The position numbers were made by a program, and so were the translations under genes. Source: Cyanophora paradoxa CCMP329 (Eukaryota > Plantae > Glaucophyta). From it: 64,000 nt of DNA. Within the stretch, counting starts at the first letter, position 1. Every line of letters starts with the position of its first letter. The stretch covers positions 530,339 to 594,338 of the forward strand of contig QPMI01000062.1 of the NCBI GenBank assembly GCA_004431415.1. Direction: 5' to 3'. Below the pieces are notes generated by a model, which saw only the letters and a list, made by a program, of their open reading frames with translations, ran no database searches and had not been told where the DNA came from. Of the stretch, positions 54,735 to 61,698 are shown piece after piece.

Positions 54735-55060
54735 CGCTCAACCGCCGGCAGCTTGACGAGGGGGGGCTTAAGTGCCGTCTATAAATGTGTAGCTAAGGGT
54801 CCGAAGGAGTTACGCCGCTCCAGGGCGCCCGGAATCGACGCAAAGGCGAGCTCCAAATCGAGCTCGAGGTGCGTGCCAGGCGTTGGCAGGAATGATGAGA
54901 TTCGAGCTCAGCTAGAGGAATATGTCAGTTTCTTGCTAGTGGCGGCGCTCGGAGCAGTCGGGCTAGCCGCTGCTTTTTGCGTAGCGTACCCCACTGGACA
55001 CTCTTCTGAGCTCTTCAAAGCCACTGCCCCAGCATTTGGACGCATCCCCGGTCCTCCTCG

Positions 55061-56011
55061 ATGCAGCTGGGACGGGTGCTGTTCACCGCCGGCCTGCCCT
55101 GCGCGGCCCCGGCGCGTCGACCCTCGCCGCTCTGCTGGCAGCCCGCGCCCTTCGCGCAGCCGCTTCGAACCGTACACGCAGGTGCCCATGGCCCAGGGAG
55201 AACTGCTCAGAGCCGTTCCTGACCTCGCCCGCGCCTCGCAGCCCCGCAGCTGCCGACGCAGCGTCGGCGCTGGTGCGCGGACCACCAGCAGCAGCCACGC
55301 GTGATCCGGTGGACGGCGAGCGCGCAGGCGAGCTCGGAAAGCGCCTCGGTGGCCCGCGATCTTGAGAACGGGAGGACGCTGAAGCAGGCGGCGGGGTGGA
55401 AGACGAAGTCAAAGCCGATCACGGAGATGCCGAGCTCGGCGGCGGAGATCGGGACGAGATTCCCGCGGTGCGTTCGGATCGTGGACCCGAAGGACTTCGC
55501 GTACGTCTACCACCGCTCCCGGAGGCGCGTCGGCCGCCTCATCATCGTCGACGCCGTCTTCAACGCCGGCTCCGGCTCCGAGGGCGGTGCGCCCCGCACC
55601 GGAACCTTCTCCCGAGCCGGCCCGGCAGCTCACCTTGTTGCGGCGGGCAGGCTACGCGCCGGTACCGTCGCCGTTCGCGCGGGTGGGGGTGACGGTGTCG
55701 CGCAAGTACGGCAAGGGCCACGAGCGGGTGCGCTTCAAGCGGATCGTGCGGGCGGCCTTCCGGAACATCCAGCAGGAGCTCCCGCCCGGCCTCATGTTCG
55801 TCGTCCGGCCCCGAATGGCCTCTAAGGACGGTGCCCGCGCTGTTGTTTTCTCCGAGCGCTCCCCGCCGCCCCCCCGGCCCCGCCCCCCTGACTCCTCCCC
55901 CGCGCAGCCAAGTCGACGGACATCGCGCAGGAGATGAAGGAGCTGCTCTTCAACGAGCGCGGCGGGTCCGGCCCCGGCCAGCATGCGCAGCAGGCCGCCC
56001 CCTACACGTAG
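55061..56011 (+). CDS. rnpA: Bacterial-type ribonuclease P protein component with N-terminal targeting-like extension
   Basis: Exons 55061-55181, 55242-55586, 55651-55830 and 55908-56011 join in frame: RFPRCVRIVDPKDFAYVY..RVGVTVSRKYGKGHERVRFKRIVRAAFRNIQQELPPGLMFVVRPR..DIAQEMKELL, the full RnpA pattern. Confidence 0.9.
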
Positions 56012-56066
56012 CCGGCGCGGCCAGTGGCCTGTTTGTATCGTAATCGCTATCGGAGCTAGCGAGGCG

Positions 56067-57782
56067 CTAGTAGCACTCCTCGAGGGAGTCGCTCTCCGAG
56101 TTGGAGAGGATGTCGACGACGCGGGCCGCGCGCCGCGAGACGCGGATCTCGCCCCGCCGCCACGCCGTCCCCGCCACCTCCCGCCGCGCCGCCTCGGGCT
56201 CGGGCGCCGGCTGGGGCGGCGCCGCCGCGGCCGCGCGCGCCCGCTCGCGCTCGCGCTCGCGCTCGCGGGAGACGGAGCGGCGGCCGACGGCGGCGAGCTC
56301 GTCCACCAGCACCGCGAAGGCCGACGCCGCCGGGCGAGCTGGAGGGCCCGCCCGCCCGCCCGCCCTCCCCCGCAGCCGGGCCGGGGCCGCTAGCGGGGGC
56401 GGGGGCGGGAGGCGCTCCGGGGAGGGCGGCGGGCGCATGAACTGCGCCTTGCGGACGAGCCTGCCGGCGACTCAGGGGCGCCGGCCCGGCCGAGGGCGGG
56501 GCGGGGCCGGGGGGGCCGGGGGCGGACCGGGCGGCGCGGGGGTTCTGGGCGACGAGGCGGAGGAGGTGCTGGCGCTTGAACGCGTTCCCCGCGTCGCGCT
56601 CGAGCCCCGCGAGCTGCCACTCCGCCGAGCTCTCCGCCGCCCGCACCAGCCCCGCCAGCGCCAGCGACCCCTGCGAGCTCTGCCCCCGCCTCAGGGGCCC
56701 TCCAGGGGCGCAGGGCCGGCGAGCGCCGCGGCGCGCACCCGGCGGGCTCTCGTTGCGCGCGGAGCTGGGGCGGCGGCGGCGGAGGAGAGGGCGGGGCGGG
56801 TGGGGGACGACGAGGAGGCGCGCGGCTGCGGGGCGGCCCGCGGGGCGCCGGGGCCCGGCAGCCGCACGGGGAGAAGGGGCCCCGGGCCAGGATCGCTGCG
56901 CCCCCGGCGCTCAGCTCGGACGGCCTCAGATGCAAGCGAGTGCGAGCGCTGGCAGGCGGACCCTCGGCGTGGAGGCGCGGGGGCTCGACGGCGACGGAGG
57001 CGGGGAGGTAAGGCCGCAGGACGAGCTCGGAGCCGGCCGGGGCGCGCTCGAGGGTCGCGGCCAGGTCGGCGGCGCGCTCGCGCAGGGCCGCCTCGGCGCG
57101 GGCGCGGTCCGCCTGCAGCGCCTCCCGCAGCCGCTCCGAGAGGCGCTGGACCTCCTCGAGGAAGCGCCGCTCGCACTCCTTGTAGCGATCCGCGTACTCC
57201 CGCTTCAGCTGCTCGGCGCGGCGCGAGAGGCCCTCCGTCTCCGCCGCCCGCGCCTCGTTCATGTATTGCATCGCCCGCTGCAGGTTTGCCTCCGTCCGCC
57301 GGATGTCTGCGCGACCGAGCGTCGGCCCCGGGCGCAGCGGGGCGGCGGGGCAGCGCACGGTTCTCCTGCTCGCTGACGAGGCTGGAGGAGACGGCGACGA
57401 GGCTCCGGAGCTGCTCCTCGATTGACACCGCCGTCGAGCCGATGTCGATGCTCGCGTCTGCGCCCCCGGGCCGCTTGGCGGGCGACTTCCGCGCGCTCGG
57501 CGTGCCACCCGCAGCGGCACCCCCTTTGGCGGGGCTGACACGGCTCGCCTGCGAGCGCGCGGGCGAGGCCCCCGCGGCCCCCGCCGCCTCGCTGGAGACC
57601 TCTTTGACATCTGAGACGCGCCCGACTGCTTAGCTATGCCCAGGCGGCCGGCAGCTAAGGAACCGGGCGTCCGAACCTCGGGTCCCAGTGAAGGCAATGC
57701 GACGAAACGGAAGGATCGGGGATATGATCGACGACTCGCTCTCAGTGTCGCTCACTGCACGCTGTCTCCTTGAGCGCGACAT
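56067..57782 (-). CDS. Hypothetical coiled-coil protein
   Basis: MSRSRRQRAVSDTESE..SIEEQLRSLVAVSSSLVSEQEN..EANLQRAMQYMNEAR..RVVDILSNSESDSLEECY*, with phase-compatible introns at the 5' end. Confidence 0.6.
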
Positions 57783-60121: not shown

Positions 60122-61698
60122 CTAGGCGTCGAGGGCGGGCCCGGAGTAGTCGGCCCAGGCGAGGGAGGCGATGGTGCGGGCGAGGCGGGCCGGGTGCGGC
60201 GCCAGCATCTGGACGAGCTGGAGGCGCGCCTCGGGGTCCCCCTCGGAGGCCAGGCCGCGCTCCAGCGCCCCGATCCGGTCCGCCGCCTCCATCACCAGCG
60301 CCCGCTCCCGGCCCCCCGGCGCCAGCCGCGAGCACTGCCCCGCGTACATCTGCGGGGGTGGTAGATGGCCGGTCAGACAGAGCCCGGAAGCGAAGCGAGG
60401 GCGAGCTCCGAAACGCGCACGAGGAGGTCGGTGCGGGCCGCCTCGAGGTCGCGCCCCAGCGCGAAGCGCAGCAGCGCCAGGTCCCGCCGCTCGCACACCT
60501 GCTCGCGTCGGGTCAGATCGGATCGGATCAGATCTGATCTGAGCCGGGCTGACGTTGAGGGGGTCGACGAGGGCGAGGAGCTCGGCGGCGGCGAGTGCGC
60601 CCTCGAGCTCGCAGCGGCTCAGGTGAACGCTCTTCAGGCCACGCAGCACACGGAAGAGCGTCCTCCGCCTCGGCTCCCCCCTCAGCATCCTGGCCCCTCG
60701 CTTAGCCAGGCCGAGGGGCGGAGGACCAAGCGAGAGGGGCGGGGCGGACGGGTCGGGGAGGGCGGCGGCGGGGTCCCGGGTGAGGGTGCGGAAGCGGGCG
60801 AGGCAGTCGTCGCGGTAGAGGAGCGCGCCGCCCTTGGCCGCGTCCACGAGCACCTCGGGGCCCTCCTCGCCGTCCCGCGCCCGCGGGCGCAGCAGGAAGG
60901 GCCCCGGGAAGGCCGCCACGTCGCACGCGAGGCCCATCCGCTCGCACACGGCCGCGTAGAGCAGCGTCAGCGGGCCCGTGTAGCCTGGGCGAGGAGTCAG
61001 CGGGGCGAGGAGGAGGGGGACGCGAGGAGGGGGCGGACCGCTGCGGGCGGCGAGGGCGTAGGAGAGGTACGCGGCGGCGGGGCTCCGGTGCTCCCGCGAC
61101 GTGCGGAACCCGAGCTCCTCGAAGAGGTACCCCCGCGCCGCCCGCAGCACCCGCAGCGGGTACGGCGACTCCGGCGCGTGCTCCCGGGCCCCCTCGGCTG
61201 CCGGCCGGCTCAGATGCGATCGGCGGCGGCCGCGGGGGCGGGGGGCCGAGCGCGGCGCCGGCGCACCGAGGGAGTCGAGGGCGGCGAGGGTTTCGGAGGC
61301 GGGGACACCCGTGGCGTTCTGCTCGATCAGCGCCGCCACGCGCGCCAGGCTCATTTCCTCCTCCCGGCTAATCTCCTCGAACACCTGCGACGGCCCAGTC
61401 GGATTCTGCGCCGGCGGCGGCAGAGCGAACTCCGGTGCCAGCGCACCTCGCGGTGAATCTGCACTCGGTCCACGGCCGGCCGTGCCTGGGCGACGTCCAC
61501 GTCCAGCTGGGCCCGCGCGTCTTTCGGGGCAACGGGAAGAGACGCGACGAACACTCGTCGCCGGTACTTGGTCGGCAGGCGATCCGCCGGCGAGGAAGAC
61601 CGCCACTGTGCCGCCTTGCTGCTGGGGATAACTGGCGCCGGGTGCGCCGCCGGCCTGGCCGAGGGGACGCCGACGGAAAATGCGGCACCAGTTTCCAT
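60122..61698 (-). CDS. SirB1 / transglutaminase-like core (Transglut_core2) + TPR protein, probably plastid-targeted
   Basis: Leader METGAAFSVGVP; YPLRVLRAARGYLFEELGF, LTLLYAAVCERMGL, FPGPFLLRP, VLVDAAKGG, LFRVLRGLKSVH, ERRDLALL. Confidence 0.78.

What the first reader, a model, noticed from the sequence alone, without database searches (positions are those of the whole stretch)
55061..56011. Nucleus-encoded, organelle-targeted bacterial RNase P protein with an altered RNR motif and Chlamydiae-like signature
Seen: a four-exon gene encoding a complete RnpA fold behind a ~100-aa extension that begins MQLGRVLFTAGLPCAAPARRPSPLC (Ala/Pro/Arg-rich, early Phe, no acidic residues at first). The hallmark A-x-x-R-N-R-x-K-R reads G-H-E-R-V-R-F-K-R. 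Established: glaucophyte plastid genomes encode the bacterial RNase P RNA (rnpB) but not rnpA, and most eukaryotic organelles use PRORP or unrelated proteins. Inference: this may be the imported partner of an organellar rnpB. The segment TVSRKYGKxHER.xFKRIVR resembles, as I recall it, Chlamydiae RnpA (GITVSKKFGKAHERN.FKR) more than cyanobacterial RnpA. That would make a chimeric holoenzyme of cyanobacterial RNA and horizontally acquired protein.
Basis: partly seen in the sequence, partly recalled or inferred. Interest (0 to 1): 0.85.

Follow-up and report, generated by a model that had tools for sequence, protein, structure and literature searches.

The report
Chlamydia-like RNase P protein in Cyanophora

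Summary
Window 55061-56011 (+) holds a four-exon gene. Its spliced product equals the public gene model tig00000241_g21064.t1 (P0001, 249 aa) of Cyanophora paradoxa.

- **Domain:** residues 114-229 are a complete RnpA domain (PF00825 74 bits; TIGR00188 above its cut-off). An AlphaFold model (pLDDT 85) matches only bacterial RNase P proteins in the PDB.
- **N-terminal extension:** its 113 residues have Phe at position 8 and no acidic residue before position 54, as in cyanelle transit peptides.
- **RNR motif:** it reads R-V-R. The Val is real but not unique; four bacterial relatives have it too.
- **Relatives:** 141 of 149 best hits in an exhaustive search fall in a clade holding all Chlamydiota-labelled rows, and every named member is Chlamydiota. 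The ML tree puts the alga there (100/97; 998 of 1000 bootstrap trees).
- **Limits on the origin claim:** AU tests cannot reject a position just outside that clade. I could not fetch any labelled cyanobacterial or alphaproteobacterial sequence.
- **Untested:** expression, import and activity.
- **Literature:** the cyanelle RNase P protein is described as unidentified, and glaucophytes as apparently lacking PRORP. This gene is not in the published list of 37 chlamydial transfers.

Verdict: a real new member of a known kind, worth bench work.

The parts
55061..55181 (+). Exon 1: start codon and first 40 codons plus one base of the N-terminal extension. Phe at residue 8, Pro/Ala/Arg-rich, no acidic residue.
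   Evidence: Translation. In-frame stop 17 codons upstream. Identical to P0001 residues 1-40.
55182..55241 (+). Intron 1, 60 nt, phase 1, GT..AG. Contains an in-frame TGA at 55220-55222.
   Evidence: Its removal is needed to reach P0001.
55242..55586 (+). Exon 2: rest of the extension (to residue 113), then the start of the RnpA domain with helix 1 (the conserved leader-binding aromatic residues Phe126 and Tyr130), strands 1-2 and the first half of an inserted loop.
   Evidence: Alignment to homologues. Alignment to E. coli RnpA. Pfam domain starts at residue 114, which is base 55460.
55587..55650 (+). Intron 2, 64 nt, phase 1, GT..AG. It lies inside the loop insertion between strands 2 and 3.
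   Evidence: Six other frame-compatible GT..AG pairs exist, so this junction rests on the shared donor motif and the public model, not on homology.
55651..55830 (+). Exon 3: strand 3, the RNR helix, strand 4 and the conserved Arg210.
   Evidence: PF00825 49.3 bits alone. TIGR00188 38.0 bits alone. Alignment to T. maritima RnpA.
55716..55751 (+). RNR motif region, residues 178-189. Val182 (GTG 55728-55730) stands where Asn is nearly invariant. Every Arg/Lys position is kept.
55831..55907 (+). Intron 3, 77 nt, phase 1, GT..AG.
   Evidence: Homologues align across this junction without a gap, which supports the exact boundaries.
55908..56011 (+). Exon 4: C-terminal helix of the RnpA fold, a short low-complexity tail and the stop codon TAG.
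55562..55676 (+). Lineage-specific insertion of about 12 residues (148-164, interrupted by intron 2) in the loop between strands 2 and 3. Predicted with low confidence.
   Evidence: Alignment.

Best explanation
This is a genuine nuclear gene of Cyanophora paradoxa for the precursor of a bacterial-type RNase P protein (RnpA).

Shown:
- A spliced four-exon gene encodes an intact RnpA fold. It keeps all the Arg/Lys positions of the RNR helix that bind the P RNA. It also keeps the leader-binding residues that matter most in Thermotoga: Phe126 and Tyr130 correspond to F17 and F21, and Arg210 corresponds to R89.
- Its closest relatives are RnpA proteins of Chlamydiota.

Inferred:
- The 113-residue N-terminal extension is a cyanelle (muroplast) transit peptide. 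The mature protein of about 15 kDa and pI about 11 would then be imported.
- In the cyanelle it would bind the weakly active, strongly protein-dependent RNase P RNA encoded by rnpB. It would supply RNA stabilisation and 5'-leader binding for pre-tRNA processing.
- The holoenzyme would then be chimeric: a cyanobacterial-type RNA with a protein acquired from a chlamydia-like bacterium that replaced the endosymbiont's own rnpA.
- Val in place of the RNR Asn is a tolerated variant, possibly co-adapted, and not a sign of decay.
For: Gene and domain:
- The gene model equals the public protein P0001.
- PF00825 scores 74.2 bits against a cut-off of 22.3. The TIGR00188 equivalog scores 42.3 against 38.35.
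- The AlphaFold model has pLDDT 85 and pTM 0.77. The top 16 Foldseek PDB hits are all bacterial RnpA, for example 1a6f at TM 0.85 and rmsd 1.5.
- Key residues align with E. coli and T. maritima RnpA. In T. maritima, RNR-region point mutants are near wild type, while F17 and R89 are critical (PMC3488217).

Targeting:
- The extension has Phe at position 8, no acidic residue before 54, and 9 Pro in the first 52 residues.
- Published cyanelle transit peptides have Phe within the first 10 residues in 49 of 77 cases. Their median length is 63 residues, range 11-110 (PMC4510345).

Need for such a protein:
- All glaucophyte plastid genomes carry rnpB but no gene for the protein (PMC6330054).
- Glaucophytes apparently lack PRORP (PMC10941002).
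- The protein subunit is 'presumably nuclear-encoded' and no rnpA had been found in algae outside prasinophytes (PMC3858429, PMC4264200).

Chlamydial affinity:
- Searches give Chlamydiota as the named best hits.
- The clade of the query plus 72 chlamydial-type rows has support 100/97 and appears in 998 of 1000 bootstrap trees. The query is nested within it in 930 of those trees.
- The grouping runs against compositional bias: the host gene has 70% GC and the chlamydial loci a median of 42%.

Val variant: it also occurs in four bacterial relatives, two of them shown to lie on bacterial contigs and all in the chlamydial-type clade.
Against: - There is no transcript evidence.
- The protein and two of its tryptic peptides were not found in the supplements held for the cyanelle N-terminome and proteome paper.
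- No orthologue from a second glaucophyte or from a red alga turned up.
- AU tests do not reject placing it outside the chlamydial clade (p 0.31 and 0.40).
- The identity margin is modest: median 36% to chlamydial rows against 31% to other rows.
- No labelled cyanobacterial, alphaproteobacterial or prasinophyte RnpA was in the tree.
- From my own recollection, unchecked here: cyanelle RNase P was reported to have a much higher protein content than bacterial enzymes. If so, this protein may not be the only subunit.
Confidence: 0.65

Rival explanations
1. The gene descends from the cyanobacterial endosymbiont (ordinary endosymbiotic gene transfer). Its chlamydial look would be an artefact of a short, fast-evolving protein and of my sampling.
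For: - AU tests cannot exclude a position outside the chlamydial clade.
- The genome scan used a peptide pattern that may have excluded cyanobacterial RnpA, so no cyanobacterial row was compared directly.
- The query sits on a long terminal branch of 0.76-0.98.
Against: - The pattern-free phmmer search of 1.84 billion representatives returned no hit that groups outside the PVC bacteria among the best 150. Of 149, 141 fall in the chlamydial clade and 8 group with Planctomycetota.
- Every named hit is Chlamydiota or Planctomycetota.
- 998 of 1000 bootstrap trees join it to the chlamydial rows.
- Compositional bias would pull a GC-rich gene away from AT-rich chlamydiae.
Confidence: 0.12
2. The protein is targeted to mitochondria, or to both organelles, and not specifically to the cyanelle.
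For: - The extension is basic and free of acidic residues, which also fits mitochondrial presequences.
- Glaucophytes apparently lack PRORP, so mitochondrial tRNA 5' processing also needs an enzyme.
Against: - Phe at position 8 and a Pro-rich N-terminus that disfavours a helix fit the cyanelle signal.
- The glaucophyte mitochondrial genome paper I checked does not mention rnpB. RNase P RNA genes are reported in algal mitochondria only for two prasinophytes. A mitochondrial RNA partner is therefore not known.
Confidence: 0.1
3. The protein is an RnpA relic, or has been put to another use, and no longer acts in RNase P. The Asn-to-Val change, the unique Gly at the first motif position and the loop insertion would mark loss of P RNA binding. 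Cyanelle rnpB would work with other, unidentified proteins.
For: - The motif deviates at two near-invariant positions.
- There is no expression or proteome evidence.
Against: - The open reading frame is intact across three introns, and the fold is predicted with confidence.
- All RNA-contacting Arg/Lys positions and the leader-binding residues are kept.
- The same Val occurs in four bacterial relatives, where this is presumably the only rnpA gene; I did not check those genomes.
- Point changes in the RNR region barely affect Thermotoga RNase P.
Confidence: 0.1
4. The gene is bacterial contamination or an annotation artefact in the assembly.
For: Nothing specific. Bacterial-like genes in algal assemblies are always suspect.
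Against: - It has three introns with a shared donor motif, and exon GC of 69-75% like the surrounding window.
- It carries a eukaryote-type N-terminal extension.
- It lies on a 64-kb window of the same composition, and no bacterial sequence exceeds 48% identity to it.
Confidence: 0.02

Closest known systems
Nuclear-encoded bacterial-type RNase P protein of Ostreococcus tauri and close prasinophytes (Lai et al. 2011, as described in PMC4264200 and PMC4919922)
   Same: It is a nuclear gene for an RnpA homologue in an alga whose organelle genomes encode bacterial-type RNase P RNA. It is presumed to be the imported partner of that RNA.
   Different: - It comes from a different algal lineage.
- Ostreococcus also has a PRORP, which glaucophytes apparently lack.
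- No eukaryotic sequence other than the query itself was seen among the best 150 hits (length and N-terminus screen) or the sources of 120 profile hits, so the two are not close.
- I could not test its relationship to the Cyanophora protein directly.
RnpA of Chlamydiota, for example Waddliaceae MBT3393813.1, Simkaniaceae MCI5052343.1 and Parachlamydiaceae MGK5595094.1
   Same: These are the best sequence matches, at up to 47% identity over 110 columns. They share the G-[IV]-T-V-S-[RK]-K-[YF]-G-K ... R-F-K-R-[IL]-V-R signature and fall in the same clade in the ML tree.
   Different: - The bacterial genes have no introns and sit on AT-richer loci (median 42% GC).
- They have no N-terminal extension and no insertion between strands 2 and 3.
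- Almost all have Asn in the RNR motif.
Structurally solved bacterial RnpA (B. subtilis 1a6f, T. maritima 1nz0/3q1q, E. coli 7uo0, S. aureus 6d1r)
   Same: Same fold (TM 0.75-0.85 normalised by target) and the same RNR helix. The leader-binding aromatic residues and the Arg equivalent to Thermotoga R89 also align.
   Different: Identity is only 19-28%. The alga has Val for Asn, an extra loop and a transit-peptide-like extension.
Published chlamydial gene transfers in Cyanophora paradoxa (Price et al. 2019, Table S8; PMC6704402)
   Same: These are chlamydial-affinity, intron-bearing nuclear genes. Several act in organellar RNA maturation: TruA, rRNA methyltransferases, a 23S pseudouridine synthase and YihA.
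   Different: This gene (g21064) is not among the 35 + 2 listed candidates. It has no demonstrated orthologue in a second glaucophyte, which that study required for its glaucophyte-specific transfers.
PRORP (protein-only RNase P of plant organelles)
   Same: It performs the same cellular task, 5' maturation of organellar pre-tRNA.
   Different: It is an unrelated fold that needs no RNA, and it is reported absent from Glaucophyta.

Membership tests
Bacterial RNase P protein RnpA (PF00825 / TIGR00188) | Profile match above the curated cut-offs | tested here: met
   PF00825 scores 74.2 bits against 22.3 and covers profile positions 1-105 of 109. TIGR00188 scores 42.3 against 38.35.
Bacterial RNase P protein RnpA (PF00825 / TIGR00188) | Alpha-beta sandwich fold, with the RNR helix in the crossover between strands 3 and 4 | tested here: met
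   The AlphaFold model has pLDDT 85 and element order H-E-E-E-H-E-H-H (the 5-residue helix 112-116 precedes the C-terminal helix). The top 16 Foldseek PDB hits are all RnpA, with TM up to 0.85.
Bacterial RNase P protein RnpA (PF00825 / TIGR00188) | Arg/Lys positions of the RNR motif (R-x-R-x-K-R-x-x-R) | tested here: met
   R181, R183, K185, R186 and R189 are present. These columns are 98-100% conserved in 367 rows.
Bacterial RNase P protein RnpA (PF00825 / TIGR00188) | Asn of the RNR motif | tested here: not met
   The residue is Val182. Asn occupies this position in 360 of 367 rows. Val occurs in 5 distinct sequences, four of them bacterial.
Bacterial RNase P protein RnpA (PF00825 / TIGR00188) | Leader-binding residues equivalent to T. 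maritima F17, F21 and R89 | tested here: met
   Phe126 and Tyr130 align with E. coli F18 and F22. Arg210 aligns with T. maritima R89. Their functional weight comes from PMC3488217.
Bacterial RNase P protein RnpA (PF00825 / TIGR00188) | Binds RNase P RNA and stimulates pre-tRNA cleavage | not testable with these tools
   This needs reconstitution with cyanelle rnpB RNA.
Nucleus-encoded cyanelle (muroplast) precursor protein | N-terminal extension relative to bacterial homologues, with Phe in the first 10 residues and no early acidic residues | tested here: met
   There are 113 residues before the domain, Phe at 8 and the first Asp/Glu at 54. The criteria come from PMC4510345.
Nucleus-encoded cyanelle (muroplast) precursor protein | Detected in the cyanelle proteome or N-terminome | tested here: inconclusive
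   There was no hit for the name or for two tryptic peptides in the three supplements held. Low-abundance proteins are commonly missed.
Nucleus-encoded cyanelle (muroplast) precursor protein | Spliced transcript exists | not tested
Intron 3 is supported by gap-free homology across the junction.
Chlamydial gene transfer to Archaeplastida | Nearest relatives are Chlamydiota | tested here: met
   Exhaustive phmmer search plus named cluster members. Profile search. Genome scan in which the best roughly 40 loci are almost all Chlamydiota.
Chlamydial gene transfer to Archaeplastida | Supported placement within Chlamydiota in a tree, robust to topology tests | tested here: inconclusive
   The ML clade has support 100/97 and appears in 998 of 1000 bootstrap trees. 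AU p values of 0.31 and 0.40 do not reject exclusion.
Chlamydial gene transfer to Archaeplastida | Tree includes cyanobacteria and alphaproteobacteria as the alternative donors | not tested
   No labelled cyanobacterial or alphaproteobacterial RnpA could be fetched. The scan pattern may have excluded them, and the plasmid collection held none.
Chlamydial gene transfer to Archaeplastida | Present in at least two glaucophytes or in other Archaeplastida (criterion of Price et al. 2019) | tested here: not met
   No second eukaryotic sequence appeared. Database coverage of other glaucophytes is unknown.

The most novel reading that the evidence does not exclude
Cyanelle RNase P is a chimeric ribonucleoprotein. 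Its catalytic RNA is inherited from the cyanobacterial endosymbiont. Its protein cofactor was captured from a chlamydia-like bacterium and displaced the endosymbiont's own rnpA. RNase P would then join the set of chlamydia-derived RNA-maturation factors that service the plastid. The R-V-R variant and the enlarged loop between strands 2 and 3 would be co-adaptations to the AU-rich, strongly protein-dependent cyanelle RNA.
Probability: 0.45. Interest if true: 0.8.

Novelty: new member of a known kind. Interest (0 to 1): 0.68.

Why it matters
The protein part of cyanelle RNase P is described as unidentified in papers from 2013 and 2014 that I read. One suggests plastid rnpB genes in algae might be non-functional relics, because no rnpA partner could be found outside prasinophytes. 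Glaucophytes apparently lack the protein-only alternative, PRORP. An RNA-based plastid enzyme with an imported protein is therefore the expected solution.

This gene supplies a concrete candidate. With it, native reconstitution of a plastid RNase P, its localisation and its composition become directly testable.

If the chlamydial origin holds, it would be a case of an essential ribozyme paired with a cofactor from a third organism. It would also add a core tRNA-processing factor to the debated chlamydial contribution to plastid establishment.

Tried and rejected
They were searched one by one by reference. The joined sequence used afterwards is the database record P0001, which one search returned and which matches the exon translations.
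- The look-up of encoding contigs found no contig with exactly this product.
- The ESM Atlas feature search confirmed only the family. Its commonest taxon, Actinomycetota, probably reflects GC-rich composition.
- NCBIfam lineage-specific RnpA models did not discriminate between lineages.
The narrower one produced a pattern that may have excluded cyanobacteria.
- A tblastn of the plasmid collection, meant to obtain cyanobacterial RnpA, gave only Proteobacteria and Firmicutes. I used four of these as extra outgroups.
- My first regular-expression count of the RNR position matched an N-terminal Arg-rich stretch and was wrong. I replaced it with an alignment-based count.
- I considered the long, N-terminally extended hits as possible eukaryotic homologues and rejected them. 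Most share a conserved extension that I read as bacterial gene calls over-extended through rpmH in another frame, by inspection and not verified; the rest look planctomycete-like, P0127 is a fusion, and P0061 (185 aa, no such extension) stayed unresolved and unnamed.
- Node supports read after re-rooting were shifted. I recomputed them per bipartition.
- Paper searches combining chlamydia, plastids and RNase P returned nothing.
Full report
**1. What is in the sequence**

On the + strand between 55061 and 56011 there are four coding segments separated by three short GT..AG introns.

| Feature | Coordinates | Length |
|---|---|---|
| Exon 1 | 55061-55181 | 121 nt |
| Intron 1 | 55182-55241 | 60 nt |
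| Exon 2 | 55242-55586 | 345 nt |
| Intron 2 | 55587-55650 | 64 nt |
| Exon 3 | 55651-55830 | 180 nt |
| Intron 3 | 55831-55907 | 77 nt |
| Exon 4 | 55908-56011 | 104 nt |

- All three introns are phase 1. They share the donor G|GTGC[CG]C and the acceptor GCAG|.
- Intron 1 contains an in-frame stop. Retaining intron 2 or intron 3 would shift the frame.
- An in-frame stop lies 17 codons upstream of the ATG.
A search with the exon 2 reading frame returned a public protein, P0001 (249 aa, source EukProt, name tig00000241_g21064.t1). Its sequence equals the exon translations plus the three split codons. I used that record as the spliced model from then on.
- The naming scheme and contig number are those of the Cyanophora paradoxa v2 annotation. 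That paper's supplement lists other tig00000241 genes.
- The genome properties reported there (67.6% GC, many short introns with a mean of 86 bp) match the window.
- Earlier notes of this scan also name the genome as C. paradoxa.

**2. It is a complete RnpA**

- Exon 3 alone hits Pfam PF00825 at 49.3 bits.
- The whole protein scores 74.2 bits over residues 114-229, covering 105 of 109 profile positions.
- Residues 110-249 pass the TIGR00188 rnpA equivalog cut-off.
- An AlphaFold model of residues 100-249, built with 61 homologues, has mean pLDDT 85. It shows the RnpA fold, with one low-confidence loop.
- Its best 16 Foldseek matches in the PDB are all bacterial RNase P proteins. Examples are B. 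subtilis 1a6f at TM 0.85 and rmsd 1.5 Å, the T. maritima holoenzyme 3q1q, and E. coli 7uo0.
- Alignments to E. coli and T. maritima map Phe126 and Tyr130 onto the leader-binding aromatic pair. Arg210 maps onto Thermotoga R89.
- F17 and R89 are the two protein residues whose mutation most damages Thermotoga RNase P. Point mutants in the RNR region are near wild type (PMC3488217).

**3. The RNR motif**

- Residues 178-189 read G-H-E-R-V-R-F-K-R-I-V-R.
- Those 7 rows are five distinct sequences: the alga, P0002, P0014, P0025 and P0149.
- P0002 and P0014 sit on bacterial contigs. P0002 has Dus and UvrD as neighbours. P0014 lies on a 109-kb activated-sludge contig.
- In P0025 and P0149 the following Arg is also changed.
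- The variant is therefore rare (about 1%) but recurs in what are presumably sole, essential bacterial copies, which I did not check. That argues against reading it as decay.
- The Gly at the first motif position is unique to the alga in this set.
- An insertion of about 12 residues lies in the loop between strands 2 and 3 and coincides with intron 2. Homology cannot confirm that junction, and six other frame-compatible GT..AG pairs exist. Homologues align without a gap across the junction left by intron 3.

**4. The N-terminal extension**

- 113 residues precede the domain.
- Phe is at position 8 and the first acidic residue at position 54. Nine of the first 52 residues are Pro.
- The cyanelle N-terminome study finds Phe within the first ten residues in 49 of 77 transit peptides. 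It reports a median length of 63 residues, range 11-110 (PMC4510345).
- The extension fits these features, but this is prediction only.
- Neither the protein name nor two of its tryptic peptides occur in the supplements held for that paper.

**5. Relatives**

- A pattern-free phmmer search of exon 3 against 1.84 billion representative proteins gave 875 hits at E ≤ 0.001. Apart from the query itself, the best scored 58.9 bits.
- Cluster members with names are Simkaniaceae, Chlamydiia, Ca. Algichlamydia, Waddliaceae and Parachlamydiaceae. The few hits without the signature are Planctomycetota.
- A profile search returned 1218 proteins. Every named one among the best 120 is Chlamydiota, and none comes from a eukaryote source.
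- A scan of one genome per prokaryotic species kept 80 loci. The best roughly 40 are almost all Chlamydiota.
- This scan used the peptide pattern GKA[HVN]xRNR[FI]K. That pattern may well have excluded cyanobacteria.

**6. Trees**

- The ML tree has 109 rows and 118 columns, under LG+C20+F+G4.
- One bipartition separates the alga plus 72 chlamydial-type rows from the 36 others. It has support 100/97.
- The 72 rows comprise all 39 rows named Chlamydiota, 28 unnamed rows and 5 bins that submitters labelled Verrucomicrobia or Acidobacteria. The 36 others are Acidobacteriota, Planctomycetota, Bacillota, Pseudomonadota, Myxococcota and further phyla.
- The bipartition is present in 998 of 1000 ultrafast bootstrap trees. 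The alga is nested inside the clade in 930 of them. In 556 it groups closely with P0002, which shares the Val.
- Its nearest named neighbour is a Waddliaceae protein (support 78/90).
- The AU test does not reject trees that hold the 72 rows together without the alga (ΔlnL 11.4, p 0.31).
- It also does not reject holding those 72 rows plus two Planctomycetota together without the alga (ΔlnL 8.1, p 0.40).
- The identity margin is small: median 36% and maximum 47% to the chlamydial clade, against 31% and 38% to the others.
- The grouping joins a gene of about 70% GC with loci of median 42% GC. It therefore runs against compositional attraction.
- I rate a chlamydia-like origin as likely but not proven.
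- The direct comparison with cyanobacterial, alphaproteobacterial and prasinophyte RnpA is the main gap. I could not obtain such sequences by reference.

**7. Context in the literature**

- All glaucophyte plastid genomes encode rnpB and none encodes the protein (PMC6330054).
- The cyanelle RNA is only weakly active alone and is strongly protein-dependent.
- Its protein is 'presumably nuclear-encoded' (PMC3858429).
- In 2014 no rnpA had been found in algae outside Ostreococcus and its relatives. The authors therefore raised the possibility that plastid rnpB genes are relics (PMC4264200).
- Glaucophyta and red algae apparently lack PRORP (PMC10941002).
- Price et al. 2019 list 35 + 2 chlamydial transfers in C. 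paradoxa. Several are RNA-maturation enzymes. g21064 is not listed.
- Searches of the held library for chlamydia together with plastids and RNase P found no paper.
- The gene model with its Pfam tag is public. I found no description of it as the cyanelle RNase P protein or as a chlamydial transfer.

**8. Mechanism**

Shown: an intact, intron-bearing nuclear gene for a full RnpA fold of chlamydial type.

Inferred:
- Import into the cyanelle through the Phe-containing transit peptide.
- Binding of the rnpB RNA through the RNR helix.
- Binding of pre-tRNA leaders through the central cleft.

Rivals are cyanobacterial ancestry, mitochondrial or dual targeting, a relic or reassigned protein, and contamination. 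The last is effectively excluded. Each is weighed in its own section of this report.

**9. Not done**

- No localisation or activity data exist.
- No second glaucophyte orthologue was found.

Noticed in passing
P0002 (L001:876-1202), P0014 (L002:4001-4351), P0025, P0149: Four bacterial RnpA of the chlamydial type also carry Val in place of the RNR Asn. In two of them the next Arg is replaced as well (R-V-Y and R-V-Q). Val is the only alternative to Asn seen in 367 rows. In the ML tree the Val-bearing rows do not all cluster together, which suggests recurrent change.
   Followed up: partly
Database proteins such as P0012, P0018, P0019, P0066, P0075, P0088: Many chlamydial RnpA entries of 150-216 aa share a conserved N-terminal extension. 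It looks like the upstream rpmH gene read in another frame, that is, over-extended gene calls and not real fusions or eukaryotic precursors.
   Followed up: partly
L014, L018, L024, L038 (labelled Verrucomicrobia) and L031 (labelled Acidobacteria): These metagenome bins carry rnpA genes that fall inside the chlamydial clade. Either the bins are mislabelled or contaminated, or rnpA has moved between these phyla.
   Followed up: no
P0127 (263 aa): A chlamydial-type RnpA domain is followed by about 150 extra C-terminal residues of unknown nature. This may be a fusion.
   Followed up: no
P0008 (391 aa): A tandem-repeat protein unrelated to RnpA scored 56.6 bits against exon 3 through five weak repeated matches. 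It is most likely a repeat-summing artefact.
   Followed up: no
window 54779-54790: A TATAAAT element lies in a locally GC-poorer stretch about 280 bp upstream of the start codon. It may belong to the promoter.
   Followed up: no
window 56011-56070: A long minus-strand ORF (56067-56438) ends only about 55 bp downstream of the rnpA stop codon. No family match supports it as a gene. If it is one, the two genes converge and their 3' UTRs probably overlap, as described for many C. paradoxa genes.
   Followed up: no
window 60122-61603 (-): An ORF here has a transglutaminase-like domain (PF13369, 55.7 bits). The other long ORFs within 8 kb of rnpA gave no Pfam hit.
   Followed up: no
Same contig, outside or far from the finding (tig00000241_g21027): Price et al. 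[quoted passage not shown] I did not determine whether it lies within this window.
   Followed up: no
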